From positions 124,001 through 188,000 of IMG/VR virus record IMGVR_UViG_3300005965_000002: 64,000 nucleotides of DNA, one strand, 5' to 3'. Of the stretch, positions 3,033 through 57,300 are shown piece by piece. Made by a program: the position numbers and the translations under genes. The notes under the pieces are model-generated. The model searched no databases. It worked only from the letters and a program-made list of their open reading frames with translations, and was not told the origin of the DNA. Each line of letters begins with the position of its first letter. The first letter of the stretch is position 1.

Positions 3033-3868
3033 AAATAGTATGTAAAATATGCGGGCACTCAGGATTAGACATATCATCGCATATAAGGCTAAAGCACAAT
3101 ATCTCTATTGTAGAGTATCGTGAAAAGTATAAATGCAGAGTAGTTAGTCCAGAGATAGATAAGAAAAGAAAAGAAACTACAAAGAAATTGTATGGGGATC
3201 CTAATTGGCGTAATAAAGACGCTCAAAAATTAATGTTCTCTGATTATAAAGGCGGGCATCCGTTTAAAGATCCTGAATGTAGAAAAAAAGCGTGTAAGAC
3301 AAAAGAAAAATTATATGGGGATCCTAATTACACTAATAGAGAAAAAGCAAAGAAAACTAATTTGGAGAGGTATGGGACTGAATATACATGTGCTTCAGAG
3401 CAAGTGATAGAAAAAAGGATAAAGACTCTAAAAAGCAGGTATGGGAAAGTATTTAATGTTGAGGAACCACATAACAAGACAAAACCTCCAGAAGATTTTA
3501 AGGAAGTATTTATTAAGGAGGGTTTGACATATGATGCCCTGTCTTATAAGTACGAAGTCTCTGTCCCTACTATAAAAAGGTGGGTAGACGAGCTATCTTT
3601 AAAAAGAGAACCTGTAAAATCTTCTGAAAAGAGCTACGAATCACCTGAAGAATTAGTATCAAAGTACTTGGATACATGTTACGAACTATCGAAACCTTTA
3701 TCATTTTATGATTACGGCAAAATAAAAGGTGGGAAGTATTGTAATAGACTTAAGAGGTTATTTAATAAAGGAAAAAAGTTTGAGCATATCAAACCCTTAT
3801 TGAATAGAGCAGTTACAGATCAGTCATTAAAGCATAAGGTTCTGTATGAAATGGAATCTCCGCTATAG
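3029..3868 (+). CDS. C2H2-type zinc finger / basic repeat / HTH protein (homing-endonuclease-associated architecture)
   Basis: CKICG...SHIRLKH; repeats KKLYGDPNW, KLYGDPNY, KKTNLERYG; HTH-like YEVSVPTIKRWV; ATGA overlap with upstream gene. Confidence 0.7.
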   Translation: MKIVCKICGHSGLDISSHIRLKHNISIVEYREKYKCRVVSPEIDKKRKETTKKLYGDPNWRNKDAQKLMFSDYKGGHPFKDPECRKKACKTKEKLYGDPNYTNREKAKKTNLERYGTEYTCASEQVIEKRIKTLKSRYGKVFNVEEPHNKTKPPEDFKEVFIKEGLTYDALSYKYEVSVPTIKRWVDELSLKREPVKSSEKSYESPEELVSKYLDTCYELSKPLSFYDYGKIKGGKYCNRLKRLFNKGKKFEHIKPLLNRAVTDQSLKHKVLYEMESPL

Positions 3869-3960: not shown

Positions 3961-6000
3961 ATGCATAAGATATCAGATGATACTATAAAAGAGCTAATAA
4001 TCGATAGGAAAATGACAGATCACCAGGCAGCTAAGTATTTAGGTGTAAGCCGCATGACCGTATCTAGGAGAAGAAATAAAATAGGTATAGATCAGAAGCC
4101 TAAGCGTCCTGATGGTTACTATGAATTAACAGCGGAGCAGGAAAAAGAGTTAGAAAGGCACTACAACGAAGGTAGGAACGATTACGAAGTTTCAGAGTTA
4201 ACGTGTTTAGGCAGGAACAGATTACGTGAGTGGAGAAAAAAAAGAGGAATACTCTCTAAGTCTAATAAAAAAGGCTTAGGCAAAGAGGATGCTGAGAAAG
4301 CGATACTAATGAGAAATAGTGGTAGCACATATGAACAGATAGCTGCTGAGTTTGGTGTTAAAAGAACATCAATATCAAAACTACTTAAAAGAAGCGGGTA
4401 TAAAGAAGATAATATGTATAGGCCCACCAGCCCTAAATGGGCTGAATCCTATACTCTTACCAATGACCAGAGGTCTGTCATAATTGGAGATCTTTTAGGA
4501 GATGGTACTTTAGTATCTACTTCAGAAGAAAACGCATACTATCAGTCAGGCCACTCGAATTATCAAGAATTTTTTATAAGATGGAAATATAGTGTGTTAT
4601 CTCCGCTGACTTCGAGTGTGGGTAGTAAAAAAGATTATAGCGCTTACTCTGTAAAGACTTGGACATGCCGAGAACTAGGAGCATTAAAAAAAGTTTTTTA
4701 TCCCGAAGGTAATAAAGTTATTAATAAAGAGATCGCAGACACCATTAATGAGATCACGCTAGCAGTTTGGTATATGGGAGATGGGTCGTTAATTAGGAAA
4801 TCCCCTTATATACATATAGGCAAACAAGTGGATGCAAGTGTTTTTAAGGAATCCATTTTAAGGAATTTAAGCATATCTTCCTATGTGAGGGACTACAGTA
4901 AAGAGAGTCACTTAGTATTTGAGTCCGATTCTTTCTTTAAAAAAACGGCTCCATACATATTACCAGAATTTTATAAAAAGGTTCCTGAAAATTACCACAC
5001 TAACTTAGGGAAGTACTGGTCTGATAAGAGTTTGTTTCCTTATGTAACTTCTGATATTTATTTAAGATTACCGGATAAAGATAAGATACAAGTAGTTAAT
5101 GCTTTGTGCGCTTATTATAGAAAAAAAGGTTTTCCTTACCCGAGATGCAATAGAAGGGAGTTGCTCAAGTCTTATAAGTCTTTTTTAGATAAGGATAATG
5201 AGGTAGCAGCATTTAAGATATGTAACCATTTTATGCCTCATAGATATGATTGTCGTAGGTATGATAGCAACCCGATGGAAAATTGGAATAATGATAAACT
5301 TTTTAGAAAGTTTATTATTAACAGACTAACTTATGGAAAAGGTTATATATCAGATTCTGTCATTAGGACAGGTATGCAACTAAAAGGTGTAGTAGCTAAT
5401 TTCAGCCCTATGACTGCCCGTTACATCTATAATAACTATTTACCGGAAGGAGGATCTTCTCTAGATTTTAGTTCTGGTTTTGGTGGCAGGCTGCTTGGGT
5501 TTCTGGCTTCAAAACCCTCCGGTACGTATTTAGGTGTGGAGCCTTTTACAAAGTCTTATATTGGCTTAGAAAAAATGAAGGAATATTTTTTAGACCACAA
5601 CAAATCTAAGTCCGTAGATATAGTAAAATCTCCTTTTGAAGACTTATGTGGTAAACTTAGTGGTGGCTCGTTTGACATGGTATTTTCTTCTCCTCCTTAT
5701 TATGGCTTAGAGATTTATAGTGAAGACTCTACACAGAGTTTTATCCGTTACCCTAAATATGAAGATTGGCTAAATAACTTTTGGTATTTGGTTTTAGATG
5801 AAAGTATAAGGGTGCTGAAGAGGTCAGGTCATCTTATTTTTTCGATAGGAAACTATAAAAATTATGATCTAATACACGACACTAAATATTATTTAAGGCA
5901 GAAGAGCGTAGAAGAGAAAGGTTCCATTAATATTCATTATAAAAACGTATACCTTAATTCTAAGAAGAAAGAAGATGTATTCGTGTATAAAAAACTTTAA
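3961..6000 (+). CDS. HTH - LAGLIDADG endonuclease - amino-DNA methyltransferase fusion (second paralog)
   Basis: N-terminal HTH repeats (AAKYLGVSRMTVSRRR; IAAEFGVKRTSISKLL); IIGDLLGDGT and LAVWYMGDGS; LDFSSGFGGRLLG and VFSSPPYY. Confidence 0.85.
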   Translation: MHKISDDTIKELIIDRKMTDHQAAKYLGVSRMTVSRRRNKIGIDQKPKRPDGYYELTAEQEKELERHYNEGRNDYEVSELTCLGRNRLREWRKKRGILSKSNKKGLGKEDAEKAILMRNSGSTYEQIAAEFGVKRTSISKLLKRSGYKEDNMYRPTSPKWAESYTLTNDQRSVIIGDLLGDGTLVSTSEENAYYQSGHSNYQEFFIRWKYSVLSPLTSSVGSKKDYSAYSVKTWTCRELGALKKVFYPEGNKVINKEIADTINEITLAVWYMGDGSLIRKSPYIHIGKQVDASVFKESILRNLSISSYVRDYSKESHLVFESDSFFKKTAPYILPEFYKKVPENYHTNLGKYWSDKSLFPYVTSDIYLRLPDKDKIQVVNALCAYYRKKGFPYPRCNRRELLKSYKSFLDKDNEVAAFKICNHFMPHRYDCRRYDSNPMENWNNDKLFRKFIINRLTYGKGYISDSVIRTGMQLKGVVANFSPMTARYIYNNYLPEGGSSLDFSSGFGGRLLGFLASKPSGTYLGVEPFTKSYIGLEKMKEYFLDHNKSKSVDIVKSPFEDLCGKLSGGSFDMVFSSPPYYGLEIYSEDSTQSFIRYPKYEDWLNNFWYLVLDESIRVLKRSGHLIFSIGNYKNYDLIHDTKYYLRQKSVEEKGSINIHYKNVYLNSKKKEDVFVYKKL

Positions 6001-13632: not shown

Positions 13633-16600
13633 ATGGAAAATGCCCTTAAAAAAGGATTAAGCTTAAGTCTTATTGTGGGCCCCGGTGAATCCTCTGAGCT
13701 GGAGAGATGTTTAAAGTCCTGTATTGGATCATTAAACGGGAAAAAGGATCTTTTTGATGAGATAAACATCACATTTGCTACAAAAAAAGAAGACGATAAA
13801 GTCTGGGAGGTAGCAAAAAAGTATGGTACTAAAGTTACGAGATTCGATTGGATAAATGATTTTTCTGCTGCAAGAAATTTCAACTTCAACCAATCAGAGA
13901 TGTCTCATATCTTCTGGGTAGATGCCGATGACGTTATAAAGCCCGAGCAGTACGATAAGTTACTGGAAAGAAAAGAACGTATCTATCAGTTAGATATGAT
14001 TTTAATTTCCTACGTATACGCGCACGACAACGAAGATAAACCTGTCATAGTTCTACCCCGCGAACGAATAGTCAGAAATTGCCCTCAGATAAGGTGGGAG
14101 GATCCGATACACGAGTACCTTCCCATGCTAGCAAACTTTAAAATGCAGGAATGGAAAGATTTAGCGCTTGACCACTATCGGATGAAACCATTTAATCCGG
14201 AGCGAAATGTTTCCATACTAGCGGAACAGTACAAGAAGCCTACCTGTACACCTCGGAATAAGTTTTACTATGGAAAAGAATTATTTGATATACAGCAGTA
14301 CGATAAAGCTCTTCCTATTCTTGAAGAATATGTAAACGAAGGAAAAGATTTCCGAGATAATCTAACGGTTGCTTGCATAAAACTAGCAACGTACTATTAC
14401 GTAAATAATGATAAGCCCTCTGCAAAGGATTTTGCTCTAAGGGGTATGCGGTTTAATAGTGAGTATGCAGAGAACTACGTAATAGTAGGAGATGTGTTAG
14501 CTGAATCAGGATTGTTTGATGAGGCTATCCAATATTATTCAGAAGCATCCGGCAAGAAGCTAACCGGGGGTATGTCTCAGCTAGTAGATTATTACGGGTT
14601 TATTCCGAATTATCGTTTAGCCGTGATGTACGCCAATAAGCGGGATTATAAGAAGTCCAAGGAATATGCCTTACAGGCATTGGAAATAAAACCTAATAAT
14701 CCTGAATTAAAAAATTTGGTAAACCAATTGGACACCAACATCTCTGAGAGCGAAAAAGAGAAGGTAATGGATGAGAACTTTGTAAATGAGTTGCAAAAGT
14801 TCTTGTCTGACCATAATTTTTCCTTAGCTGTTGAAGAAAACAATTCTTTCTTTGGAAGAATAAAACTTTCTGTAAAAAAGAATGTTTCTATAGCCTGGAT
14901 GTTGCCTGGTATAAATCCAGAAGATCCTGCCACCCGTATACGTCGGTTGAATATAAATAAATATTTTAACGATAACTCTGTCGGTGTCAAAACATGTATA
15001 GTAACCAATTATCTCACACTGTCTCCTTATGAGATAAGAAACAAGATAGGCGAGAGCACCGTAGCTGTTTTTACGACCTATACCTCGAAGGATAAGGAAG
15101 CAATAGATTATCTGAAAAATATAGGAGTACGAGTAATCTATGATATCGCTGAAGCCATCTTTGATATGCCGGGTGTTGCAGAATGCCTGAAATTAGCGGA
15201 TGGTATAGTATGCTGTTCCGAGAAGCTTGCAGAAATGTGTATGGAAAGAGGCCTGCGGAATGTAATGGTTATTAAGGATGCCATAGAAAAGTGGGCTCCA
15301 GTAAAAGAACACAAAGAAATAGAAAAACCAAAAGCTCTCTATATGGGTATGGGCGGTAACAGCTTTCTTGTTACAGAATTCTTAAAAGACACAATTACTG
15401 AAGCTGGTTATGATTTAGAAGTAATTACTGAATGGGATGACGCTACTAAGAAATGGTCATTGGAAACCTGGGCGGAAGATATGGTAGCGTGCGATGTTGT
15501 GTTATGCCCCCAAAGAGTTGACGTGCAGCCTGCGAAGTCGGACGTTAAGGCCTCAGTAGCAATGGCATTGGGAATGCCCGTTATAGCCAGCAGCCTGCCT
15601 TCTTATAGAACTATAATCAAAAATGGTGAAAACGGATACATATGCGAGACTAAGGACGATTGGAAAGAAGCTCTGATTAAATGCAAGGATTATAAACATA
15701 GAGCAGAAATCGGAAAGAAAGCTAGAGAATCTATAAAGGATCATAGCATAGAAAAAGTAACTGAGCAATGGAAGCAGGCTAGCCTGGAAACTCTTGAGAG
15801 TGAACAGACAAGCGTTCAGATCCAGCAGTCAACTCCAGATAAAAGAAGAGACATTGTAGACATAATCATTCCTAATTATCAGAATGTAGACTATTTGAAG
15901 ATGTGTCTCACATCGATAAGGATGAATACACTTTATCCTTATCATATCATCATTTCGGATGCAGGTAGCAATAAAGATACATGGGAGTACCTTAAGTCAT
16001 TAAAGGGAATTACGATCCTCGGCGAGGAGGGTGTTAGAAAAACATATTCCGAAACATGCAACACCGGGATAGAAGCGTCTTCTTCTAAGTTCTTTGTGAT
16101 TATTAATTCTGATATTATCGTGTCCAAGGGTTGGATTACAAATATGATGGACAAGATGACGTCAGTTGATCGATTAGCTGCCTGCGGAGTCCTATCTAAT
16201 TGTGATAGAGGGTGGCTGCACAATGTCCCTGGCAGAGATGACATACCGCAGTACCCTATGCGTTTAGAAAAAGCAGGAATAGATCTGGTTCCCGGCATGA
16301 AGAAAGATCAAATAGCTCCTCATATAGAAGAGCTGTACGCTTTTATGGATGCCTCTAACAAGAGATACAAAGGAAAATTTACCCCTCAGAAATGGGTAGC
16401 TGGTTACGCTACGGTATATGCACGCAGTGCTATTAATGAGGTCGGTCTCTTTGATCCTAGATATAAAAATGGGTGCGAAGATTCAGACCTTTGCTATCGT
16501 TTAGAGAAGTGTGGCTATGCCATGGGTCAGGCTATTGATGCTTTTGTTTTCCATTTCGGGGGCGTAAGCAGGGGTGCTTATCAAGATGAGGGGCGGGAGC

Positions 16601-17787
16601 ATTACGATAAGGAAGACAAGGAAAATCATGCAAAGATTAGAACTAAGTGGGCTAAACCCAGAGTGGCTATTTACACAGGACCAGCATGGGAGCCTTGGGA
16701 TAAGGAAAAAGTTGATGAGGGCATGGCCGGATCAGAAACTTGGGCAGTGTATTTAGCCGAAGCCTTTGTACGAAAAGGGTATGAGGTAAGAGTGTACAAT
16801 GATCTTACGGGAGATAAGAAAATACCCAAGGTAGAGCCTGTTTATTTAGATGGAGGTAGAGGAGTCGCCGGTGGAGTAATCTATAGGGATTACTCTGAGA
16901 TGATGGAAGATCTAAAGTACGACCATATAGATCATTTCATATGTTCACGCTCGGTTGCTCCTTTTTACGAAAATCTGCATTCAGGACGAAACTATGTAAT
17001 GATACATGATATCTGGTTGTCACAGGATCCTAATTATGATTTAATTTCCTGGAAAATACAGAGGTATGCCTATTTAAGTGAATGGCATAAAGCATTTCTC
17101 TTACAGCATCATAAAAACATGCCTGCAGAGAAAATGTTTTTAACAGCGAATGGAGTAGTGCAGGATTGGTACTCCGATGTAGATAGTTATGAAAAGAAAA
17201 ATATGGCTGTTTACAGCTCTTCCCCTGATAGGGGTTTATATCAGCTACTACAGATGGTACCTATGATTAGAGAAGAAGTAAAAGATTTTGAGCTGAATGT
17301 TTGCTATGGTTTTTATAACTGGGAAACCGCCGCAAAGTCTCGAAATGATATAGCATCTCTCCATTTGATAGAAAAAATTAAAGATCTGATGAATCAGCCT
17401 GGTGTAAATTACTTAGGAAGAGTCTCTAAAAAGGAGTTGGCTGAGTTACAGAAGCAAGCTAAAGTTTGGCTTTATCCGACCTGGTTTGCTGAAACCTTCT
17501 GTATAGGAAGCGTAGAGTGTGGCCTTAGCAAGTGTGCCCTGCTTACAACGGATCTAGCAGGATTACAGACGACAGCCAAAGATGCTGCGATAATGCTTAA
17601 CCCGAACGGATTGAGCAGAGACGGAGAGTACCCAGACACGTATATAAATGAATTCGTTAGCAAAGCTATTGATCTACTAAATAACGAGGAAGTTAGAAGA
17701 GAATGGGCTGATAAAGCTTATAATAAGATGCTAAATTATACATGGGATAAAATCGCAGACGGATGGGAACAACAATTTAAAGACTAA
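13633..17787 (+). CDS. Multidomain glycosyltransferase: GT2 + TPR + GT-B + GT2 + GT-B (GT4-like)
   Basis: DFSAARN and WVDADD (GT-A); TPR helices; KSDVKASVAMALGMPVIAS (GT-B); DIIIPNY, INSDI, GCEDSDLC (GT-A); GSETWAVYLA, SSSPDRGL, ETFCIGSVE (GT-B). Confidence 0.88.
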   Translation: MENALKKGLSLSLIVGPGESSELERCLKSCIGSLNGKKDLFDEINITFATKKEDDKVWEVAKKYGTKVTRFDWINDFSAARNFNFNQSEMSHIFWVDADDVIKPEQYDKLLERKERIYQLDMILISYVYAHDNEDKPVIVLPRERIVRNCPQIRWEDPIHEYLPMLANFKMQEWKDLALDHYRMKPFNPERNVSILAEQYKKPTCTPRNKFYYGKELFDIQQYDKALPILEEYVNEGKDFRDNLTVACIKLATYYYVNNDKPSAKDFALRGMRFNSEYAENYVIVGDVLAESGLFDEAIQYYSEASGKKLTGGMSQLVDYYGFIPNYRLAVMYANKRDYKKSKEYALQALEIKPNNPELKNLVNQLDTNISESEKEKVMDENFVNELQKFLSDHNFSLAVEENNSFFGRIKLSVKKNVSIAWMLPGINPEDPATRIRRLNINKYFNDNSVGVKTCIVTNYLTLSPYEIRNKIGESTVAVFTTYTSKDKEAIDYLKNIGVRVIYDIAEAIFDMPGVAECLKLADGIVCCSEKLAEMCMERGLRNVMVIKDAIEKWAPVKEHKEIEKPKALYMGMGGNSFLVTEFLKDTITEAGYDLEVITEWDDATKKWSLETWAEDMVACDVVLCPQRVDVQPAKSDVKASVAMALGMPVIASSLPSYRTIIKNGENGYICETKDDWKEALIKCKDYKHRAEIGKKARESIKDHSIEKVTEQWKQASLETLESEQTSVQIQQSTPDKRRDIVDIIIPNYQNVDYLKMCLTSIRMNTLYPYHIIISDAGSNKDTWEYLKSLKGITILGEEGVRKTYSETCNTGIEASSSKFFVIINSDIIVSKGWITNMMDKMTSVDRLAACGVLSNCDRGWLHNVPGRDDIPQYPMRLEKAGIDLVPGMKKDQIAPHIEELYAFMDASNKRYKGKFTPQKWVAGYATVYARSAINEVGLFDPRYKNGCEDSDLCYRLEKCGYAMGQAIDAFVFHFGGVSRGAYQDEGREHYDKEDKENHAKIRTKWAKPRVAIYTGPAWEPWDKEKVDEGMAGSETWAVYLAEAFVRKGYEVRVYNDLTGDKKIPKVEPVYLDGGRGVAGGVIYRDYSEMMEDLKYDHIDHFICSRSVAPFYENLHSGRNYVMIHDIWLSQDPNYDLISWKIQRYAYLSEWHKAFLLQHHKNMPAEKMFLTANGVVQDWYSDVDSYEKKNMAVYSSSPDRGLYQLLQMVPMIREEVKDFELNVCYGFYNWETAAKSRNDIASLHLIEKIKDLMNQPGVNYLGRVSKKELAELQKQAKVWLYPTWFAETFCIGSVECGLSKCALLTTDLAGLQTTAKDAAIMLNPNGLSRDGEYPDTYINEFVSKAIDLLNNEEVRREWADKAYNKMLNYTWDKIADGWEQQFKD

Positions 17788-22002: not shown

Positions 22003-26643
<4,641 letters not shown>

Positions 26644-27772: not shown

Positions 27773-29305
27773 ATGTCAGTAGCTTTTTATCCGGGTCAAA
27801 CGCTAGAAAGCACAGACCTTAATATTATCATAAGAAACGACACAGGAACCCCTGTAGATCCGTTTTATATTCGTTACTCGCTTTTTGATAATACTACTGG
27901 TATTCCCGTCCTTATAGGAGCTCCAAATAGAGTGCCCGCGACCACCGGGGTTGGTAAGTACTATGCAAATGCTACTTTACCACTAGATTCCAATATAGGC
28001 GATTGGATGATCCATTGGGATTTTAGAGAAACCTCAGGCAGTCCGATGGTACAGGTAGTCCAAGAATTTAATGTAGTGGACCAGGAAGTACGAATAACTG
28101 TATCCGATAATAATAACATGAATGATATGATCCGTAGAGTCAGAGTGCTCTTGCGAGACAATAATCCCGACAGAAATTATCGCTTCAGACCACCAGCTTC
28201 AGAAAAGTTCCTACAATCTCAAGCACAGGTTTTTGGTTATATCTGGGAAGATGAAGAAATACTTGAATACATTTTAATGGCTATTGATGACTTTAATGCT
28301 GCCCCTCCTGTAACCGGGGTAACTATAGATAGTATCCCGCTGAGATGGCGTACAGCCGTTATTCTTAGGGCTTGTTCGTTTGCCTGTTTTGCTATTGCAA
28401 TGAACTGGATAGCTGATGAGTTTTCCGTAAAAGGGGACGAAAAGGTTAAGGTTAAGGACGAGGAAGGTAACGTTTATGAATTATCATTAGAAGAACTATT
28501 TGATGTAATATATGGTGATAAAATTTTGGAGATGGAGAAAGAAGTACGGGACGAATATAAGAAAGTTATGAAGGAACTAGATAGTGATCAATTAGTTATG
28601 AATAGAGAAAAAAACACATTTGTAAAAACCATAAAAAAAGTTTTCAGGAAGATAAAGGATATCCTTGTAAAGAAAAAAGCATACAATGTTGATAAGATAA
28701 AAGAATCTTTTTATAAAGGTAGGCTAGAAGTAAAAAGCTTATCGGAAGATAAGGGGAATGTTGATTGGGTACCTATAAAGGATATATATAGGCACAATTC
28801 CCTATATAAAAAGATGATAAAGGTAGTTACGGATAAAGGAGATGTAGTAGTAACCGACGACCACAGTTTGTTTTCTTGGGAGACAAAAAAGCCTATAGCA
28901 GCTAATAAGTTGAAGATAGGGTATCCAATAATAGCTAATGAAAATAATATTTTAGTAAAAGCTGTCATAAGAAGTATAGAAGATAATCCCGCCGAAAATT
29001 ATACATATGATTTATGCGTACCTGGAACCGAGAGCGCTTTTTTGTCCTCTGGTATTTTGGTTCATAATTCTTATACCATATCAGGCGTATCTCTGGATGT
29101 TGATAAAAGTGCAAAATATGAAGGTATGAAGAACAACTTTATCACTGAGTATGATAAGTTAAAAGAACAAGCCAAGAGATCTATTAAGATCATCCGTGGC
29201 CTTCGTCAACCGAGATACGGTGTGGGCATTTCCTCAGCACTCGGACCCTATAGTAGCCCGGGTGTCCAAGCCCGCCGCAACTTTATATCTGGCTTTAGAA
29301 ATTAA
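27773..29305 (+). CDS. Neck / head-tail connector protein interrupted by an intein
   Basis: IRRVRVLLRD...WEDEEI...AIDDFN connector-like core; exteins join as WIADEF|SYTISGVSLD. Confidence 0.7.
   Translation: MSVAFYPGQTLESTDLNIIIRNDTGTPVDPFYIRYSLFDNTTGIPVLIGAPNRVPATTGVGKYYANATLPLDSNIGDWMIHWDFRETSGSPMVQVVQEFNVVDQEVRITVSDNNNMNDMIRRVRVLLRDNNPDRNYRFRPPASEKFLQSQAQVFGYIWEDEEILEYILMAIDDFNAAPPVTGVTIDSIPLRWRTAVILRACSFACFAIAMNWIADEFSVKGDEKVKVKDEEGNVYELSLEELFDVIYGDKILEMEKEVRDEYKKVMKELDSDQLVMNREKNTFVKTIKKVFRKIKDILVKKKAYNVDKIKESFYKGRLEVKSLSEDKGNVDWVPIKDIYRHNSLYKKMIKVVTDKGDVVVTDDHSLFSWETKKPIAANKLKIGYPIIANENNILVKAVIRSIEDNPAENYTYDLCVPGTESAFLSSGILVHNSYTISGVSLDVDKSAKYEGMKNNFITEYDKLKEQAKRSIKIIRGLRQPRYGVGISSALGPYSSPGVQARRNFISGFRN
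28424..29068 (+). mobile_element. Mini-intein (215 aa, Ser1, no endonuclease)
   Basis: Starts SVKGDEKVKV; block B VVVTDDHSLF; block F YTYDLCVPGTE; ends ILVHN followed by Ser. Confidence 0.85.
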
Positions 29306-31731
29306 TTTTCTTTATTGATTATATTTATTTGTCTTTTTATCCATCTTTTATTTTCATTTAAATGCTCAGCCATTTCTTGATATGTCATAGTGCCCCTATT
29401 ATTCTTTATAAAGTATATTTTATATTTATTTTTTCGGCTTTTAGTACTACCTATAGGATTCTTCGGAGACAGAATTCCATCTTTTATCATAGATCTTACT
29501 CTGCCACTGACCCATCTTTTAGTTTCGTTTAAGTTTATAGCTATTTTTTCCTGGGTCAAGCTTTGGTAGTTATCTAAGATATATTGATCTTTTTCTTTTG
29601 TGATTCTAGAGTTGTTACTTATCCTTTTGCTTGTTCTTTTGTTTTTAGATATTTTTATCAAGTTACTATAAAAGTCGCTAAAATCATCAACGGGTACACT
29701 ATTTCTTTTAGGGTAAACTTTATCTTTATATGTTTTAAGCTTTTCCAAAATTTGTTTTTCTCTTTTGTTACAGCTTGTGAGAAGTGCGTATTTATGTTTT
29801 TTTGAGATAGGTATCTTTACTGATTTATTAATAATGGATTTTATATCTTTGTACCACTGATGTAATATTTCCTTAGGTATCTTTTTTATATTTTTATATC
29901 CGTTGTCTTTAAACCATTCACTTTTAGTTTCTATTCCTTTACTTTTGCACCAAGCTTTAAAAGCTGAAGTTCTTTTTAAGCTTTGTTCAGAGAAGGGTAA
30001 ACCATTTTTAATTTCTTTATTTTGGTATACATAACCGGTTCCGAAATCATCCCCAAGATACGAAAAGTTACAACTTTGATATATAGTACCTATTTCATTT
30101 GCCTTTGGATCTGCGTAGCAGACAAATAGCCTCTTAGGTGTGTTTTTAGTCATCCACTTACAGGAAAACATTATTAACCTACTCCCTAGGTTTTTCGGTG
30201 TCCATGAAGCAGTAGCTCCCCGTTGTATAAGGGCTTCAAAGTGTTTCGTATTCTCTCCTAATAACTTAGAATAAGAGTTTGGCTCATTAATTAGAACTAC
30301 GCCGCCCAAAAATCCTTTATATCGTGCGGTAAAAACCCATTTAGGATTGTTTCCTATTGTACCTAACCATTCATACTTTTCTATAAAGTGTTTAATTTCT
30401 TTTGTATATTTTTCTTGCTTTAGCACAAAGTCTTTTGCCTTTATCTTTGAATAGTCAAAGCTTATATTTTCTAAATCATTTTTTAATGTAGATACTTTTA
30501 TTTTGTATTGATGGCAAACAGATTTAGACGCTTTTTTGTTTAACTCATCGGTGATAAATTCTATAATATCTCCTTTTTTTTCATGGTCTACGACCAACCT
30601 GGAGTCAAATCTTACTAAATTATCTATAACGGAGTTTTGCCTTTCATCTCTAATAGATGTTTTTAAGATATTTTCCTTTCTAGGCCCTTTCTTAAAATCT
30701 TTAATCTTACCATGCCAGAAATATCCATCATATTGTACCCACACGTTAATAGATGGTAGATAGAAATCAATATTAGATTTTGAAATAGGGTGGTATACCT
30801 GGAACTCGGTATAGGGGTCTATCTTTTTAAGATACATAAGAAATTTTATTTCTTCATCGGAAGAGCTAAAGGTATTTTTTTCTTTTGATGTGTTTAATAC
30901 TTTTTTATAGATTTCCTCATTCTGCAGGGGGCTAGGTACTCCATATTTTTTAATGTTGGTTTCTTTTATTTTTTCTTTTGTAGGTTCATCCTGAAATATG
31001 TTGTCTACTCCATACTTTTTGTTTAATGTAGATTTTACCTTATTCCTTACTGCAGGGTCTTGGGAAGGATACTCTACTCCTCTTCTTTTAAGATTAGTTT
31101 CTCGGCTTTTTCTTTTCATAGATTCTAATTGAGTGGTGTACTGCACTCCGTATTTAGCTTGTACGGCTTTGGAGGTACCTAGGACATTGTCTTTTTTTAT
31201 AATATCCGGGTTTCTACTTAGACCCAATTGGTTAGCTTTATACCTAATAGATTTCCATGATCTACTAAATTTATTGATTAAAAATTCTTTAGTATTGTTG
31301 ACATATATTTCTTTCAAAAGATTTATTTCTTCCTCTTTCCAGAAATCTTCTCTTTCTGGTACTTTTTTACCACCTTCAATAGATTCTTTTTTTACTATTT
31401 CCGGATCTCTCCTTAAACCCATTGCATAAGCTTTCCCCCAAATTCCAGACCAGGGTCTATTTAATTTGTCTTGGATTTCTTTTTTAGTACCAATTGGGTA
31501 TATTGACTTAAGAGTCGATAACTCTTCCTCGGACCAGGAATCTTTTCTTTTCCCCCTAGTGGCTCGGTCTTTTCCAATCACAGTGGCGTCTCTTTTTAAT
31601 CCTAGCTTTTTTGAGCGTCGATAGATAGTAGCCCATTCTTTATCGAGTAGTTTAGTCAATTCCGATTTTCTTTTATTTTCAAAATTTTCTCTTAGGATCT
31701 TATCTTCTTCAGGAGTCCATCGTTTAGCCAT
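29302..31731 (-). CDS. Myb-like repeats + basic repeats + DUF559/Vsr-like nuclease + Mom-like GNAT domain + HTH fusion
   Basis: 3x W(T/S/K)xEE..L..LGL.R repeats; KKYGV repeats; IDFYLP...VQYDGYFWHG; FIEKYEWLG...KNLGSRLI...YADPKANEIGTIYQSCNFSYLG; two terminal HTHs; only credible minus-strand gene. Confidence 0.8.
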   Translation of the reverse strand: MAKRWTPEEDKILRENFENKRKSELTKLLDKEWATIYRRSKKLGLKRDATVIGKDRATRGKRKDSWSEEELSTLKSIYPIGTKKEIQDKLNRPWSGIWGKAYAMGLRRDPEIVKKESIEGGKKVPEREDFWKEEEINLLKEIYVNNTKEFLINKFSRSWKSIRYKANQLGLSRNPDIIKKDNVLGTSKAVQAKYGVQYTTQLESMKRKSRETNLKRRGVEYPSQDPAVRNKVKSTLNKKYGVDNIFQDEPTKEKIKETNIKKYGVPSPLQNEEIYKKVLNTSKEKNTFSSSDEEIKFLMYLKKIDPYTEFQVYHPISKSNIDFYLPSINVWVQYDGYFWHGKIKDFKKGPRKENILKTSIRDERQNSVIDNLVRFDSRLVVDHEKKGDIIEFITDELNKKASKSVCHQYKIKVSTLKNDLENISFDYSKIKAKDFVLKQEKYTKEIKHFIEKYEWLGTIGNNPKWVFTARYKGFLGGVVLINEPNSYSKLLGENTKHFEALIQRGATASWTPKNLGSRLIMFSCKWMTKNTPKRLFVCYADPKANEIGTIYQSCNFSYLGDDFGTGYVYQNKEIKNGLPFSEQSLKRTSAFKAWCKSKGIETKSEWFKDNGYKNIKKIPKEILHQWYKDIKSIINKSVKIPISKKHKYALLTSCNKREKQILEKLKTYKDKVYPKRNSVPVDDFSDFYSNLIKISKNKRTSKRISNNSRITKEKDQYILDNYQSLTQEKIAINLNETKRWVSGRVRSMIKDGILSPKNPIGSTKSRKNKYKIYFIKNNRGTMTYQEMAEHLNENKRWIKRQINIINKEN

Positions 31732-31772
31732 TTTTTATCCTTCCTAGGATGTAATAGACCTGTTATTACTTT

Positions 31773-31801
31773 AATATACTCTTTTGCTAAAAGAAATTCA
31801 A
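31773..31801 (-). promoter_or_regulatory. Sigma70-like promoter for the minus-strand fusion gene
   Basis: Minus strand TTGAAT-N17-TATATT, 41 nt upstream of the start codon. Confidence 0.6.
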
Positions 31802-31805
31802 GTTA

Positions 31806-31819
31806 ATAATCTTATAATA
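31806..31819 (+). promoter_or_regulatory. Putative late promoter motif copy 7
   Basis: ATAATCTTATAATA upstream of 31857. Confidence 0.55.
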
Positions 31820-31856
31820 ATCATCCCTATATATTCTTAGTATCATTGGAGAGATT

Positions 31857-32165
31857 ATGCCCATAGAAGTAGAATTTTTTACGTTAACCGGAATGCAGGG
31901 ATCTGGCGGAGAAACCGGAATACTTGAGCTTTCGCGTTACCCATCCACAGGTGTAGATGGTAATTACGATATTGCGATTGATCCGGTGGATGGTCCAGCT
32001 CAAATTTTAGGTGCCGACTTTGGGATCACCCACTATGGAGGTACAGCAAAGGTATTCTTTAACCTTCCTAATTCTGATATAAGAGATGTCCTATTAAACA
32101 GGGATCACGGCATTACGGCACCATTAAGAATTAGAGCTTTATATAACGGTGAAACTGGAATCTAA
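31857..32165 (+). CDS. Small structural protein
   Basis: 102-aa ORF; pattern ...LRIRALY resembles Ig-like strands; GETG stubs. Confidence 0.55.
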   Translation: MPIEVEFFTLTGMQGSGGETGILELSRYPSTGVDGNYDIAIDPVDGPAQILGADFGITHYGGTAKVFFNLPNSDIRDVLLNRDHGITAPLRIRALYNGETGI

Positions 32166-54397: not shown

Positions 54398-57300
54398 ATG
54401 TTACCAGAAGATGAAGTTAAGAAATTGACCGAAGCTATAACTAAAAGCTTTAGGTATGCTGATGGTATTCATAGAGCCGCTCAGGAGCAAGAAAAGCTTG
54501 CTAGAGTTATGAAAGATGTCGATGAGATGCGGAAGAAGAACATAGCTACCATGAGAGAAGAGAAGAAAGAGTCTAGGCGATTAGAAGTTGCTGCTGCAGA
54601 CTTAGCAAGAAAGAGAGCAAAAACTGCTGAAGAGAGAAAAAAAGCTGATGAAGATTATAAAAGAAAAGTAAAAAAATTTTATGGCACAGAAGAAGTGAGT
54701 CGTTATGAAAAAACTGTGCTAAGCAGTTTACAAAAGCAGCACGGATCGGTAGAAAAATTAACGAAAGCGCAAAAAGCACATAGAAAAGAATATGAAAAGC
54801 TTTCTGGGGTAAATTTATCCGGTTTAAAAAAAGCACAAGCTGAATTGTTTGATGCTTTCACTTCTAAAAAAACTGGTAAAAGTATAGATGAAATAGCGGA
54901 TAAATACCAGAATGTGGTGAAGTCGATGCAAGATGCCGCAAAGAGAACTGGACAAGAAGGTCCTGAGATGCCCTCTGCTCAGGAAGCTTTGAGAACAGGC
55001 TTTTTGGCTGCTGCAAAGAGCAGAGAAAAAACTATGGAGAAATCTAGTGGGCAGATTGTAGATAGTCTCATAGATGAACTTAGAAGAGCTTCTTCTGAAG
55101 CGGAAGAAATGGAGATAATGGAGAAAGCTCTTGATATAGAGGGAGCCACAAAAGCTTTAGAACAGATGAAGCTTAAGTATGGAAAAGCTTCTTTTTTTAC
55201 AGAGTCTGGAAAGGCCGTGGGAGGTGCCGCAAAGTCCTTATTTAAAGGAGATCAGGGAGGTTTTCAGCATCAGGCTAAGAATATGCAGGAGTGGGCTACG
55301 GCTGCTAAAGCTTCAGGAAAAAAATTGGGATTTTTAGGAAAAAATATAGGATCGTTAGCCGATTTTCTAGGTAAACTGGGGAAGCTTAATTGGATCTTTA
55401 CTCTTATATCTGCTTTAGGTAAAATGATATCTATTTTCAATGACCTGGATAAGTATGTAAAAGGATTAAATCAACAGTTCTTAACTATGGCCGGTCCTGC
55501 AGGTGCTCTCGAAAATGCTGAAGCATCAATGGTGGAATTTAATAGGGCTATACACGACCTACAAAGAAACATGGAATTAGGGTTACTACCTAAAGAGGTC
55601 CAAGCATTTTTTGGTGCGGTGTCTGGAGCGGGTTTAAGCCTTCAAGGTATAATGCAATCTGTAGGAAACTATGGTGACGTTATAGAAGAAGGTAGAAAGA
55701 TGAGTTTAGAATTTGGTGTATCCATGGAAGACATGGGTAAGATGATATCCACTCAGATGCTAGAACTAAGGGCTTCGCTTACTGATGTGTCAGACGGTTT
55801 TGAGAAAATTTCTTATGATGCTGCTATGGCTGGTGTAAGCTCTAATAAGTTTTATAACGCTATTGAGTCTACCGCTCTTTCGCTAGAATTCTACGGAAAT
55901 AGTTTAAAGTACGTTTCGGGTTTACTAGCCGATATTAAGAAGACGGGAAGAATCGGATTTAAAGGAGCAGAAGATTTAGCAAAGTCGTATACTGAAATGT
56001 TTGAAGGAATGGACTTAACTAAAAAGATTTCTTTAATTGAGATGGTCGGTGTGGATCAAATGAGGTCCATTTTCGAGGAGATTGGAAAAAGAGCTGACAA
56101 GCAGTTACAAAACTTAAATAATCAGATCAAGGTAATGACAGCAGAAGGAAAGGATTTAACGGAAGAGGATAAAAAAAGATTAGAAGCTTTAAGAGAGCAA
56201 CAAAAGAATTTGAGGCATCAGGTTGATTACTATGACGAAATAGCTAAATCAGGAGATAGGGGCAGGATGGCCGAAGGTCTGTCGGGAGCTGCTGCTGCCG
56301 GTTTTGCTCCTTATTTGATACAGACGATAATGCAAAGGCTAGGACCTGGATTAATAGGAGGGGGAGAGGGAGAGACTGTAGCCAGGAAAACTATAATGGG
56401 TTCCTTATTAAGTATAGATCCAAAACATATAGATCAGACGGAAGAAATTTTGAGGGTTTTCTACAGGACTTTTGATGAATTAAATAAAAAAGCCTTAAGG
56501 TTATCTCAACAATTTCTTATAGGCGATGAAACTATGAGGAATTTGCTGTTGGAAGCAAGAGAGTCTGGGAAAGGTTTTGATCAATTAAAACCGGAATTGT
56601 TTAAGAAGTTAGTGGAAGCAAATAAAGATTTATTTGAGAACGAAGAGGAACTTAATGCTTTTGTTAAAAATTTAATAGACGCAGTTTCTGATAATATAAA
56701 CTTGTTATTAAAACCAGGAATTACAGGGGAAGAGTACGCTGAAGGAGCATTTGCTCAAATTGGTACAATGACTAGGGGCACGGCTGGGTTATCTGGTAGA
56801 GGGATGGATGAACTTGTTAGGAGCGTAACTCCGTTAGAAAAAATGTTGAATATTACTCAGGATTCTTTGAAGTATGAACTCGCGGATAACCTGATCTTCC
56901 GTAGCATGAATAATTGGTTGCATGATATATTTGAATTGCTCAAGTTTATAGGGAAAATAATGCCCAAAGGAAAATCCTACGAAGAAATGCAAGCGGATAA
57001 AGAAAAAAAGTTTCTAAAAGAAGAATTTGAAATGTACGCTGTAGCTCAAGATAAAGCTGCACAAGCCATTATGGCTATATCCGAAAAGCAGGGCCGACTA
57101 GAGGGAGAAGAAGATCCCAAAAAGATAAAACTATTAAAAGAAGAGATATCAGCAGAAGAAGAAAAATTAAAGTTGGCTAAAGAACAGATGTCAGAAATTG
57201 AATCTACCAGCGGAAGGGGAAGAGATTTAGCCGCAACCAGCAGTGTAAGCATTTCAGAATTAATACGTCGTTTACAGGAGGGTACAATACAGAGGGGTGA

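What the first reader, a model, noticed from the sequence alone, without database searches (positions are those of the whole stretch)
29302..31731. Lone antisense gene fusing a DUF559/Vsr-like nuclease to a Mom-like adenine-modifying domain
Seen: Myb-like x3, KYGV repeats, DFYLP...QYDGYFWH (Gln where Glu is usual), a Mom-like GNAT core (NLGSRL; YAD...GTIYQSCNFSYLG) and two HTHs. Known: Mu Mom hypermodifies adenine to block restriction and is toxic and tightly regulated. Inference: a hypermodification enzyme with its own targeting or cutting modules, or a selfish nuclease carrying its antidote.
Basis: partly seen in the sequence, partly recalled or inferred. Interest (0 to 1): 0.74.

Follow-up and report, generated by a model that had tools for sequence, protein, structure and literature searches.

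The report
Huge-phage nuclease fused to Mom enzyme
A very large phage from a salt lake encodes one 809-residue protein that joins a Vsr-like DNA-cutting domain to a Mom-type adenine-modifying domain; the domains are real and conserved, but this kind of fusion was already predicted for jumbo phages and has never been tested.

Summary
Window 29302-31731 (-) is an intact 809-aa ORF and the only sizeable minus-strand gene in a 163-kb plus-strand block.

Domain order:
- three Myb/SANT-like repeats
- four KYGV repeats (Pfam DUF7487)
- a Vsr/DUF559-like PD-(D/E)xK nuclease (VIA Z 10.5 to Vsr, 9.1 to homing endonuclease I-Bth0305I)
- a Mom-family GNAT (Pfam above cut-off; best Foldseek match is Mu Mom, 8bv8)
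- two C-terminal HTH repeats

The Mom residues matching Mu R111, S124, D149, Y159 and W181 are invariant in 23 homologues. So are nuclease residues D322, Q333, D335, H340 and D362.

About 90 metagenomic clusters share the fusion. In 12 related huge-phage contigs the gene, or in one a Mom-less variant, sits in the same slot beside an intein-bearing gene. It is antisense in 11 and co-directional in one; one relative has an empty slot.

This Mom subfamily is also fused to PD-ExK, HNH/EndoVII-like, LAGLIDADG and GIY-YIG nucleases.

Best reading (about 0.5): momylation protects the phage's own DNA while the fused nuclease cuts unmodified DNA.

Iyer et al. 2021 predicted such Mom-REase fusions, so this is a new member of a known but untested kind.

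The parts
31732..31856 (-). 125-bp divergent intergenic region upstream of the gene. It holds the ribosome-binding site (AGGAAGGA) and a sigma-70-like TTGAAT-17-TATATT at 31801-31773.
   Evidence: Sequence read. Promoter-like matches in this region are no more frequent than in shuffles (12 found against 12.2 expected), so the promoter is only positional.
31186..31731 (-). Residues 1-182: three Myb/SANT-like helix-turn-helix repeats (W-x-x-E-E...W...GL-R), presumed DNA-binding.
   Evidence: Internal repeat scores are 77-133 against shuffles of 26-30 +/- 5.5. Pfam Myb_DNA-binding is recorded for homologues P0032, P0036 and P0070. A family profile matches c-Myb R3 weakly (E 0.3). The repeat number varies from 1 to 4 across the family.
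30862..31185 (-). Residues 183-290: four KYGV repeats of about 23-29 aa (Pfam DUF7487), presumed modular DNA-binding array.
   Evidence: Pfam PF24308, E 2.7e-16, 60.6 bits against a cut-off of 27. PHROG homing-endonuclease families 3339 and 12131 also match. The array expands to 8 or more units in relatives. The same repeats sit in front of other nuclease types.
30532..30861 (-). Residues 291-400: Vsr/DUF559-like PD-(D/E)xK nuclease domain. Invariant residues are D322, Q333, D335, W339, H340, D362, N371 and R374.
   Evidence: AF2 model m8d7722623a85 has pLDDT 82.9. VIA-align gives Z 10.5 to Vsr-DNA 1cw0, 9.1 to I-Bth0305I 3r3p and 8.4 to DUF559 3hrl. Foldseek's top hits are the same proteins. 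Invariant columns are listed. The register to E. coli Vsr D51/H64/H69/D97 comes.
30397..30531 (-). Residues 401-445: helical linker with a conserved CHQY motif between the nuclease and Mom domains.
   Evidence: Helices at model residues 107-140. H407 and Q408 are nearly invariant or invariant.
29704..30396 (-). Residues 446-676: Mom-family GNAT domain with the Mom-specific helical insertion, ending in the Mom C-terminal YPK motif. R504, S517, D541, Y551 and W606 are invariant.
   Evidence: Pfam Mom PF25680, 39.5 bits against a cut-off of 27.1. PHROG 1384, Mom-like. hhalign to Mu Mom gives 92%, E 6.6e-7. The AF2 model has pLDDT 91.7. The best Foldseek match is 8bv8 Mu Mom, E 1.3e-8, TM 0.67 by target. 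The ESM Atlas structure match to a Mom cluster has TM 0.80.
29305..29703 (-). Residues 677-809: basic linker and two helix-turn-helix repeats (...NETKRWV...), presumed DNA-binding. The stop codon is at 29302-29304.
   Evidence: Repeat score 75 against shuffles of 27 +/- 5.4. The DNA-level repeat is 29341-29387 / 29512-29558. HTH_11 hits weakly (E 0.028) and phrog_14101 at E 0.023. Relatives carry 0, 1 or 2 copies.

Best explanation
The gene encodes a bifunctional DNA enzyme of a huge phage, a single-chain analogue of a restriction-modification system.

Mom domain (by homology to Mu Mom): it takes glycine from Gly-tRNAGly and puts it on N6 of adenines in double-stranded DNA. The adduct rearranges to N6-carbamoylmethyl-adenine.

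Nuclease domain (inferred): the Vsr-like domain keeps a complete acidic/histidine active site and nicks or cuts DNA that lacks this mark. Targets would be the host chromosome or a co-infecting unmodified phage. The phage's own DNA is packaged modified and re-modified after replication, so it is spared. The same mark would also blunt host restriction enzymes.

DNA-binding modules (inferred): the Myb-like, KYGV and HTH repeats tether both activities to DNA and set site preference.

Origin (inferred): the KYGV-nuclease module comes from free-standing homing-endonuclease-type genes, so the cassette may still show some mobility.

Shown here: domain identities, conservation of catalytic residues, conservation of the fusion and of its genomic slot, and recurrent Mom-nuclease fusion.

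Not shown: the chemistry, the nuclease activity, and protection by the modification.
For: Mom domain
- It passes Pfam's gathering score.
- It aligns to Mu Mom and folds like it.
- The residues matching Mu R111, S124, D149, Y159 and W181 are invariant in 23 homologues of 40-54% identity. The first two are essential, and the others strongly reduce activity when mutated (PMC13219725).
- It is the best-conserved part of the protein: 66% mean column identity, against 55% for the nuclease and 42% overall.

Nuclease domain
- It has the Vsr fold.
- The positions of Vsr D51, H64, H69 and D97 hold invariant D322, D335, H340 and D362.

Coupling of the two activities
- In a second set of fusions a canonical PD...E-I-K nuclease occupies the same position between the KYGV repeats and Mom.
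- Other relatives carry EndoVII/HNH-like, LAGLIDADG-type or GIY-YIG nucleases in front of the same Mom subfamily.
- Unrelated nuclease folds have thus replaced one another; in the PD-ExK set, the only one inspected, the catalytic motif is intact. This argues that nuclease activity, not just DNA binding, is what is coupled to Mom.

Conservation and selection
- The fusion is retained in the same slot in 11 huge-phage contigs.
- Against strains about 97% identical, listed differences are 13 synonymous to 8 non-synonymous.

Literature
- Iyer et al. 2021 reached the same prediction for jumbo-phage Mom-REase fusions.
Against: - No activity has been measured for this protein or for any Mom-nuclease fusion.
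- Mu R151, essential in Mu Mom, is Lys here and varies across the family. The equivalents of Mu W48, H58 and Y59 could not be aligned. The acyl donor or the target could therefore differ.
- The canonical metal-binding Glu of DUF559/EDxHD nucleases is Gln.
- A natural variant, P0094, keeps the Myb-KYGV-nuclease-HTH frame in the same slot but has lost the Mom domain. The nuclease can apparently persist without a cis antidote, unless a Mom gene lies elsewhere in that genome.
- A Mom domain in the same cell would also modify host and competitor DNA. Discrimination would then depend on untested kinetics.
Confidence: 0.5

Rival explanations
1. It is a free-standing homing endonuclease gene that has captured a Mom domain. 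The nuclease has a long, rare target in or near the neighbouring conserved genes of cassette-less relatives and drives its own spread by double-strand-break repair. Mom is either a locally acting antidote that masks the target in the resident genome, or simply a useful passenger (anti-restriction) that makes the phage keep the selfish gene.
For: - The KYGV-nuclease module's nearest relatives are free-standing, nuclease-only ORFs and annotated putative homing endonucleases such as F-LimIII of Dickeya phage LIMEstone1.
- The indel is exactly one gene. Relatives L009 and L012 have the two flanking genes 31 bp apart with no cassette.
- L007 has the cassette in the same slot in the opposite orientation.
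- The slot is a hotspot of selfish elements. The adjacent gene carries a mini-intein without a nuclease domain in 6 of 11 fusion-bearing contigs compared, an intein hit is also on record in L101, and L101 has an IS607-like resolvase + TnpB beside it.
- All the nuclease folds fused to this Mom subfamily are classical homing-endonuclease folds.
- The Mom-less variant P0094 persists in the slot.
Against: - The gene is single-copy in this genome.
- It is kept intact in the same slot across relatives only 40-54% identical, about as diverged as the neighbouring gene (47-65%). That looks like long co-residence rather than invasion-decay cycles.
- Mom, not the nuclease, is the most conserved part.
- No target site, flanking repeats or co-conversion tract could be shown.
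Confidence: 0.25
2. The nuclease-like domain no longer cuts. Together with the Myb, KYGV and HTH repeats it only binds or distorts DNA, as Vsr intercalates at its target. This delivers the Mom domain to particular sites. The protein is then purely an anti-restriction modifier with an elaborate targeting apparatus.
For: - Gln replaces the canonical Glu, and the domain fails Pfam Vsr and DUF559 models.
- The Mom domain is the most conserved part.
- The same window encodes LAGLIDADG + N6/N4 DNA methyltransferase fusions and a nuclease-less KYGV + HTH protein. Homing-endonuclease-derived modules may serve as DNA-binding scaffolds for modifiers in this phage.
- Stand-alone small Mom proteins of the same subfamily work without any nuclease partner in many phages.
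Against: - D322, D335, H340 and D362 are invariant at the positions of the Vsr catalytic residues.
- Gln is also the rule in free-standing nuclease-only relatives, and Vsr itself has Phe there.
- In the parallel fusion family the nuclease has an intact canonical PD...ExK motif.
- Inactive domains usually lose such residues.
Confidence: 0.17
3. The Mom-like domain does not modify DNA adenine. It acylates another substrate (RNA, tRNA, a protein or a small molecule), or uses another aminoacyl-tRNA or acyl-CoA, giving a different product.
For: - Identity to Mu Mom is only about 15-24%.
- Mu R151 is not conserved, and the N-terminal active-site residues W48, H58 and Y59 could not be mapped.
- The Mom-specific insertion is about 30 residues longer here.
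Against: - The best structural match by a wide margin is Mom itself, not other GNATs (E 1.3e-8 against 2.3e-5).
- Five functionally tested Mom residues are invariant.
- Every fusion partner is a DNA nuclease or a DNA-binding module.
Confidence: 0.06

Closest known systems
Bacteriophage Mu Mom (Pfam PF25680; PDB 8bv8), the tRNAGly-dependent adenine N6-carbamoylmethyl transferase
   Same: GNAT fold with the Mom-specific helical insertion and the C-terminal PYPK-type end. Residues equivalent to R111, S124, D149, Y159 and W181 are conserved. It is phage-encoded.
   Different: Mu Mom is a 231-241-aa stand-alone dimer under Dam/OxyR/C/Com control. Here the domain lies inside an 809-aa protein between a nuclease and HTH repeats. 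R151 is not conserved and the insertion is longer. Identity is only about 15-24%. No activity data exist.
Jumbo-phage Mom-REase-fold endonuclease fusions predicted by Iyer, Anantharaman, Krishnan, Burroughs and Aravind 2021 (Viruses 13:63)
   Same: This is the same concept and the same kind of genome. Mom is fused to a restriction-endonuclease-fold DNase, with momylation predicted to protect phage DNA while the nuclease attacks host or superinfecting DNA.
   Different: That paper gives a one-paragraph prediction from cultured jumbo phages. No cultured phage in the INPHARED set has this architecture; the best hit covers 34% of the query. The Myb-KYGV-Vsr-like-Mom-HTH layout, its fixed genomic slot and the other nuclease folds fused to Mom are described here from metagenomes.
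Vsr very-short-patch repair endonuclease, and the DUF559 / EDxHD homing endonuclease I-Bth0305I
   Same: Same fold (Z 10.5, 8.4 and 9.1). The motif D...x-x-(D/H)-G-x-F/Y-W-H...D is in the same register as Vsr D51, H64, H69 and D97.
   Different: No Pfam Vsr or DUF559 hit. Gln replaces the Glu of EDxHD/DUF559 (Phe in Vsr). Vsr is a mismatch-specific nickase coupled to Dcm, whereas this domain is preceded by KYGV and Myb repeats.
Free-standing phage homing endonucleases with DUF7487 repeats (for example putative F-LimIII of Dickeya phage LIMEstone1; PHROGs 3339 and 12131)
   Same: Same KYGV repeat array followed by a PD-(D/E)xK-type nuclease. Both are single-gene cassettes between conserved phage genes with presence/absence polymorphism.
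   Different: Those proteins are 300-430 aa with no modification domain. Their endonuclease activity is itself only putative.
Type IIG/IIL single-chain restriction-modification enzymes (BpuSI, MmeI, DrdV)
   Same: One polypeptide carries a PD-(D/E)xK nuclease, a DNA-modifying domain and DNA-recognition modules. The DrdV and BpuSI nuclease domains appear among the structural matches (Z 6.2 and 5.8).
   Different: They use a SAM-dependent methyltransferase, while this protein has a tRNA-dependent GNAT. They are cellular defence genes, and this is a gene of a lytic-type huge phage.
Phage T4 hydroxymethylcytosine with EndoII/EndoIV (self DNA modified, host DNA degraded)
   Same: Same logic: the phage marks its own DNA, and phage nucleases of homing-endonuclease ancestry destroy unmarked DNA. 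This rests on established knowledge, not on a test here.
   Different: T4 modifies at the nucleotide-pool level and uses separate proteins. Here the modification would be post-replicative and both activities are in one chain.

Membership tests
Mom family (PF25680) | Passes the curated Pfam gathering score | tested here: met
   39.5 bits against a cut-off of 27.1, residues 448-580. PHROG 1384 'Mom-like' hits at E 6.8e-13.
Mom family (PF25680) | GNAT fold with the Mom-specific HTH-like insertion, closest to Mu Mom among solved structures | tested here: met
   The model has pLDDT 91.7. 8bv8 is the top match at E 1.3e-8 and TM 0.67 by target, and the next GNAT scores 2.3e-5. The insertion is present and about 30 residues longer.
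Mom family (PF25680) | Catalytic residues R111 and S124 of Mu Mom | tested here: met
   R504 (one-column shift in the hhalign output) and S517, in P-K-N-L-G-S-R matching Mu P-R-N-S-E-S-R. Both are invariant in 23 fusion proteins and in 19 mixed fusion and stand-alone proteins.
Mom family (PF25680) | Other residues needed for activity: D149, R151, Y159, W181; W48, H58, Y59 | tested here: inconclusive
   D541, Y551 and W606 are aligned and invariant. R151 aligns to K543, which varies (K/S/A/E/T/Q/M/N). W48, H58 and Y59 lie in a part that hhalign did not align.
Mom family (PF25680) | Makes N6-carbamoylmethyl-dA in dsDNA from Gly-tRNAGly | not testable with these tools
   Needs biochemistry or modification-aware sequencing.
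Vsr / DUF559 (EDxHD) branch of the PD-(D/E)xK nucleases | Vsr-type alpha/beta fold | tested here: met
   VIA-align gives Z 10.5 (1cw0, 112 residues, rmsd 2.9), 9.1 (3r3p) and 8.4 (3hrl). Foldseek's top four are the same proteins.
Vsr / DUF559 (EDxHD) branch of the PD-(D/E)xK nucleases | Sequence-model membership (Pfam PF03852 Vsr or PF04480 DUF559) | tested here: not met
   Neither family appears at E up to 1. hhalign to E. coli Vsr gives only 6.6% probability. A PDB profile search found no nuclease.
Vsr / DUF559 (EDxHD) branch of the PD-(D/E)xK nucleases | Active-site residues (Vsr D51, H64, H69, D97; EDxHD Glu, Asp, His, Asp) | tested here: inconclusive
   D322, D335, H340 and D362 are invariant at the corresponding positions. 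The Glu position is an invariant Gln (Q333). Vsr has Phe there.
DUF7487 (PF24308) | Passes the curated Pfam gathering score over the KYGV repeats | tested here: met
   60.6 bits against a cut-off of 27, residues 188-287.
Free-standing homing endonuclease gene (functional class) | Single-gene cassette, present or absent at one site between conserved genes | tested here: met
   The slot is filled in 12 contigs, by the fusion gene in 11 and by the Mom-less variant P0094 in L101. It is empty (31-bp spacer) in L009 and L012. The cassette is inverted in L007.
Free-standing homing endonuclease gene (functional class) | Cuts the cassette-less allele and spreads by repair | not testable with these tools
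   No target site can be derived from sequence. No flanking repeats were found.
Single-chain restriction-modification enzyme (type IIG-like logic) | Nuclease and modification domains in one polypeptide, both with intact catalytic residues | tested here: met
Single-chain restriction-modification enzyme (type IIG-like logic) | The modification made by one domain blocks cutting by the other | not testable with these tools
   Needs nuclease assays on modified and unmodified DNA.

The most novel reading that the evidence does not exclude
Mom-nuclease fusions would be a distinct class of selfish phage cassettes in which a tRNA-dependent DNA hypermodification, not target-site disruption, gives the resident genome immunity to its own homing-type nuclease. 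Here the free-standing nuclease would also cut the intein-less allele of the adjacent gene and so mobilise the neighbouring nuclease-less mini-intein (collaborative homing). That would explain why the intein, the cassette and, in one relative, an IS607-like element cluster at this one slot, and why this Mom subfamily has been fused to PD-(D/E)xK, HNH, LAGLIDADG and GIY-YIG nucleases.
Probability: 0.12. Interest if true: 0.8.

Novelty: new member of a known kind. Interest (0 to 1): 0.45.

Why it matters
Mom is the only known enzyme that uses a charged tRNA to hypermodify DNA, and that mechanism was published only in 2026. No Mom-nuclease fusion has been tested.

If momylation shields DNA from the fused nuclease, these proteins would be restriction-modification-like systems built on a non-methyl, tRNA-dependent mark and carried by phages rather than cells. 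They would help explain how huge phages degrade host DNA or exclude competitors.

The conserved core with variable DNA-binding repeats could also serve as a natural set of specificity variants. KYGV arrays range from 4 to more than 8 units, Myb repeats from 1 to 4, and HTH repeats from 0 to 2.

The idea is already in the literature as a prediction. The value here is a well-defined, conserved and testable example, plus the wider pattern of Mom fused to every classical homing-endonuclease fold.

Tried and rejected
- Megablast of window 26-35 kb against cultured phages: no match. No close cultured relative exists.
- tblastn of the protein against cultured phages: no record covers more than 34% of it.
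- PADLOC and NCBIfam: no hits.
- Sequence searches of the PDB with the protein and with family profiles gave only marginal hits: Mom at E 0.29-0.59, c-Myb at 0.3, and no nuclease. The fold comparisons were needed.
- hhalign of the nuclease profile to E. coli Vsr is weak (6.6%). I use it only for the register of the motif.
- Adding stand-alone Mom relatives to the profile did not extend the alignment to Mu Mom's N-terminal active-site residues.
- Homodimer prediction of the Mom domain gave no verdict. It is neither support for nor evidence against dimerisation.
- Promoter and terminator scans were not above shuffles.
- Repeat search found no terminal inverted or direct repeats that would mark a transposon. 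The 17-nt pair I5 looks like chance.
- Sequencing-run search found only DNA metagenomes from hypersaline lakes and mats, and no RNA run. Transcription and timing could not be checked. The laid contigs show the gene intact in strains about 97% identical.
- No tRNA lies in the window.
- An alternative genetic code was considered because the genome has a CTA-anticodon tRNA. I rejected it: coding density is 91% under table 11 and 40 of 231 ORFs end in TAG.
- A tree-congruence test of cassette against distant flanking genes was not attempted, because the flanks are variable tail-fibre genes that are not shared between loci.

Full report
**1. The observation**

Window 29302..31731 on the minus strand is an intact ORF of 809 codons. 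It has an ATG start, an AGGAAGGA ribosome-binding site 8 nt upstream and a TAA stop. That stop shares a TTAA with the stop of the convergent gene 27773..29305.

The window is bases 124001-188000 of a single 258,580-bp viral contig. The contig is 38.6% G+C and comes from a hypersaline-lake metagenome. CheckV estimates it at 55% complete, which implies a genome of roughly 470 kb.

A simple ORF map shows genes mostly on the minus strand up to 94 kb. About 106 plus-strand ORFs then run from 94.8 to 257.7 kb. Within that block this gene is the only sizeable minus-strand ORF. 'Lone antisense gene' is therefore correct.

Its neighbours look like late or structural genes:
- a collagen-repeat tail fibre at 22003..26643
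- beta-helix proteins downstream
- several proteins with no family match

**2. Anatomy of the protein**

- **Residues 1-182:** three Myb/SANT-like repeats. Pairwise scores are 77-133 against 26-30 +/- 5.5 for shuffles. Some homologues hit Pfam Myb_DNA-binding.
- **Residues 183-290:** four KYGV repeats, Pfam DUF7487, above the gathering score. They also hit PHROG 'homing endonuclease' families.
- **Residues 291-400:** no Pfam hit. The AF2 model, built on a 23-sequence alignment, has pLDDT 82.9. It matches Vsr bound to DNA (Z 10.5, 112 residues, rmsd 2.9), the catalytic domain of homing endonuclease I-Bth0305I (Z 9.1) and a DUF559 protein (Z 8.4). Foldseek ranks the same proteins first.
- **Residues 446-676:** Pfam Mom, 39.5 bits against a cut-off of 27.1. 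The family profile aligns to Mu Mom at 92% probability, E 6.6e-7, right up to the shared C-terminal PYPK. The AF2 model has pLDDT 91.7. Its best PDB match is the Mu Mom crystal structure 8bv8 (E 1.3e-8, TM 0.67 by target), well ahead of ordinary GNATs.
- **Residues 707-809:** two HTH-like repeats. The repeat score is 75 against 27 +/- 5.4 for shuffles, with weak HTH_11 and PHROG regulator hits.

**3. Are the catalytic sites intact?**

I aligned 23 full-length homologues of 40-54% identity.

*Mom domain.* The 2026 study of Mu Mom (PMC13219725) found:
- R111 and S124 essential
- R151 essential
- D149, Y159, W181, H58, Y59 and W48 important

In the hhalign register:
- S124 is S517
- R111 is R504 (one-column shift)
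- D149 is D541
- Y159 is Y551
- W181 is W606

All five are invariant in the family. R151 falls on K543, which varies. The N-terminal residues could not be aligned even with a broader profile.

*Nuclease domain.* The invariant residues are D322, Q333, D335, W339, H340, D362, N371 and R374. Alignment to E. coli Vsr is weak, but its register puts:
- D322 on D51
- D335 on H64
- H340 on H69
- D362 on D97
- Q333 on F62

This agrees with the structural match.

The 'Gln where Glu is usual' is therefore the norm of this lineage. Free-standing KYGV-nuclease ORFs without Mom carry the same IDFY...QFDGxYWH.

Mean column identity is 66% for Mom, 55% for the nuclease and 42% overall. Against strains about 97% identical from other salt-lake and mat samples, the listed differences are 13 synonymous to 8 non-synonymous, and the gene is intact.

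**4. Distribution and context**

About 90 clusters in the 5.8-billion-protein set have the same DUF7487 + Mom architecture. All are unnamed and sit on contigs up to 589 kb. No cultured phage has it. The best hit there covers 34% of the protein and is a stand-alone 290-aa Mom-like protein of Vibrio phage 501E54-1.

In 12 distinct huge-phage contigs the gene occupies the same slot, between homologues of window genes 27773..29305 and 31857..32165:
- the window itself
- L002, L004, L005, L006, L007, L008, L010, L021, L022 and L024
- L101, which carries the Mom-less variant P0094

It is antisense to its neighbours in 11 of them and co-directional in L007. In L009 and L012 the two flanking genes are 31 bp apart with nothing between them, and the 150-kb fragment holding L009 (G001, CheckV-estimated 32% complete) has no copy elsewhere.

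The unit that comes and goes is exactly this gene plus its 125-bp upstream region. No flanking repeats mark it.

P0094 keeps the Myb-KYGV-nuclease-HTH frame in the same slot but lacks the Mom domain.

Accessory modules vary across the family:
- Myb repeats: 1-4
- KYGV units: 4 to more than 8
- C-terminal HTH repeats: 0-2

**5. The wider pattern**

The same Mom subfamily is fused to other nucleases:
- About 17 IMG/VR loci encode proteins of about 660 aa with KYGV repeats, a canonical PD...E-I-K nuclease and Mom.
- Relatives of about 500 aa have EndoVII/HNH-like N-termini.
- L025 and P0119 have LAGLIDADG-type domains.
- The ESM Atlas holds a GIY-YIG (+NUMOD3) + Mom cluster.

The nuclease always precedes Mom. 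Several unrelated nuclease folds in the same position, with the catalytic motif seen intact in the PD-ExK set, argue that nuclease activity is functionally coupled to Mom. These folds are the classical homing-endonuclease folds.

The same window also encodes two LAGLIDADG + N6/N4-methyltransferase proteins and a nuclease-less KYGV + HTH protein.

**6. Mechanism**

The best-supported reading (about 0.5) is a single-chain nuclease-modifier.

- Mom installs glycine-derived N6-carbamoylmethyl groups on adenines of dsDNA, using Gly-tRNAGly. This rests on homology to Mu Mom.
- The Vsr-like domain cuts or nicks unmarked DNA of the host or of competing phages. This is inferred.
- The repeats supply DNA binding. 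This is also inferred.

This is the prediction that Iyer et al. 2021 made for jumbo-phage Mom-REase fusions (PMC7824862). It mirrors T4's use of modified DNA together with EndoII and EndoIV.

The conserved antisense placement inside a late gene block would insulate the gene from late promoters. It might also shut the gene off by transcriptional collision. That is speculation; no RNA data exist.

Rivals:
- **Homing endonuclease gene that has captured Mom, as antidote or passenger (0.25).** The one-gene indel, the inverted copy, the selfish-element hotspot and the Mom-less variant favour it. Long co-residence with the neighbouring gene and Mom being the best-conserved part count against it.
- **Dead nuclease used only for targeting (0.17).** The invariant active-site residues count against it.
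- **Mom-like domain with another substrate (0.06).**

**7. Comparison and novelty**

The Mom domain passes the membership tests that can be run here. The exceptions are R151 and the unmapped N-terminal residues.

The nuclease is a structural member of the Vsr/DUF559 branch. It fails those families' sequence models and has Gln at the Glu position, so I call it Vsr-like rather than a Vsr or DUF559 member.

The kind (Mom fused to a REase-fold nuclease in jumbo phages, predicted to act like a restriction-modification pair) is already published as a computational prediction. This is a new member of that kind.

What is added here:
- a defined and conserved architecture
- its fixed slot, with presence, absence and inversion variants
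- the catalytic-residue audit against the 2026 Mom structure
- the observation that this Mom subfamily is joined to every classical homing-endonuclease fold

No experiment exists for any such fusion. I score interest at 0.45.

Noticed in passing
window 27773-29305 (+); intein about residues 217-432 (window about 28421-29068): The convergent neighbour gene (510 aa, no family match) carries a mini-intein of about 215 aa without an endonuclease domain. It ends in VHN|S and gives a weak Pfam Intein_splicing hit. Intein-less alleles of 295-301 aa occur in L002, L008, L009, L021, L022 and L024. In L004-L007 and L010 the gene is called as two ORFs split inside the intein region. In strains about 97% identical (X3, X4) the intein region is replaced by unlike sequence of similar length. 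The intein was seen only in contigs that also carry the nuclease cassette (6 of 11 fusion-bearing contigs compared, plus an intein hit in L101, which carries the Mom-less variant) and not in the one phage without it. The numbers are too small to test.
   Followed up: partly
window 1062-3032 (+) and 3961-6000 (+): Two paralogous proteins of about 660-680 aa combine a LAGLIDADG_2 domain (E 1e-13 and 3e-22) with an N6/N4 DNA-methyltransferase region. The second also has N-terminal HTH domains. These are further fusions of a homing-endonuclease-type module to a DNA modifier in the same phage.
   Followed up: partly
window 3029-3868 (+): A 279-aa protein with a DUF7487 KYGV repeat (E 7.5e-9), a ROS/MucR-like zinc-finger region and an HTH, but no nuclease domain. 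It lies between the two LAGLIDADG-methyltransferase genes.
   Followed up: no
genome C1 2056-59314 (outside the window), minus strand: There are 37 tRNA genes in the first 60 kb of the contig. They include tRNA-Gly(TCC) at 56510-56584 and tRNA-Gly(GCC) at 58570-58644, the co-substrate type of Mu Mom. A tRNA with anticodon CTA (amber-suppressor-like) lies at 30968-31041. Coding density is 91% under the standard code and 40 of 231 ORFs end in TAG, so nothing indicates recoding.
   Followed up: partly
window 22003-26643 (+): A 1546-aa collagen-triple-helix-repeat tail-fibre protein (Pfam Collagen, E 2.6e-188). Its Gly-X-Y coding raises local G+C to 50-54% against 38% elsewhere.
   Followed up: no
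L101 9776-11456: In the relative that carries the Mom-less variant P0094, a serine resolvase gene and a Cas12f1-like/TnpB gene (an IS607-type pair) sit next to the intein-bearing gene. This is a third kind of mobile element at the same locus.
   Followed up: no
window 13633-17787 (+): A 1384-aa protein with three glycosyltransferase-like regions (PHROGs 13126, 2170 and 7162). A similar large multi-glycosyltransferase gene lies near the cassette in L006.
   Followed up: no
window 30920-31080: Contig depth in runs X3 and X4 jumps about five-fold over the KYGV-repeat coding region. Short pieces of other contigs match here, which shows that KYGV-repeat genes are common in other members of these communities.
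   Followed up: no
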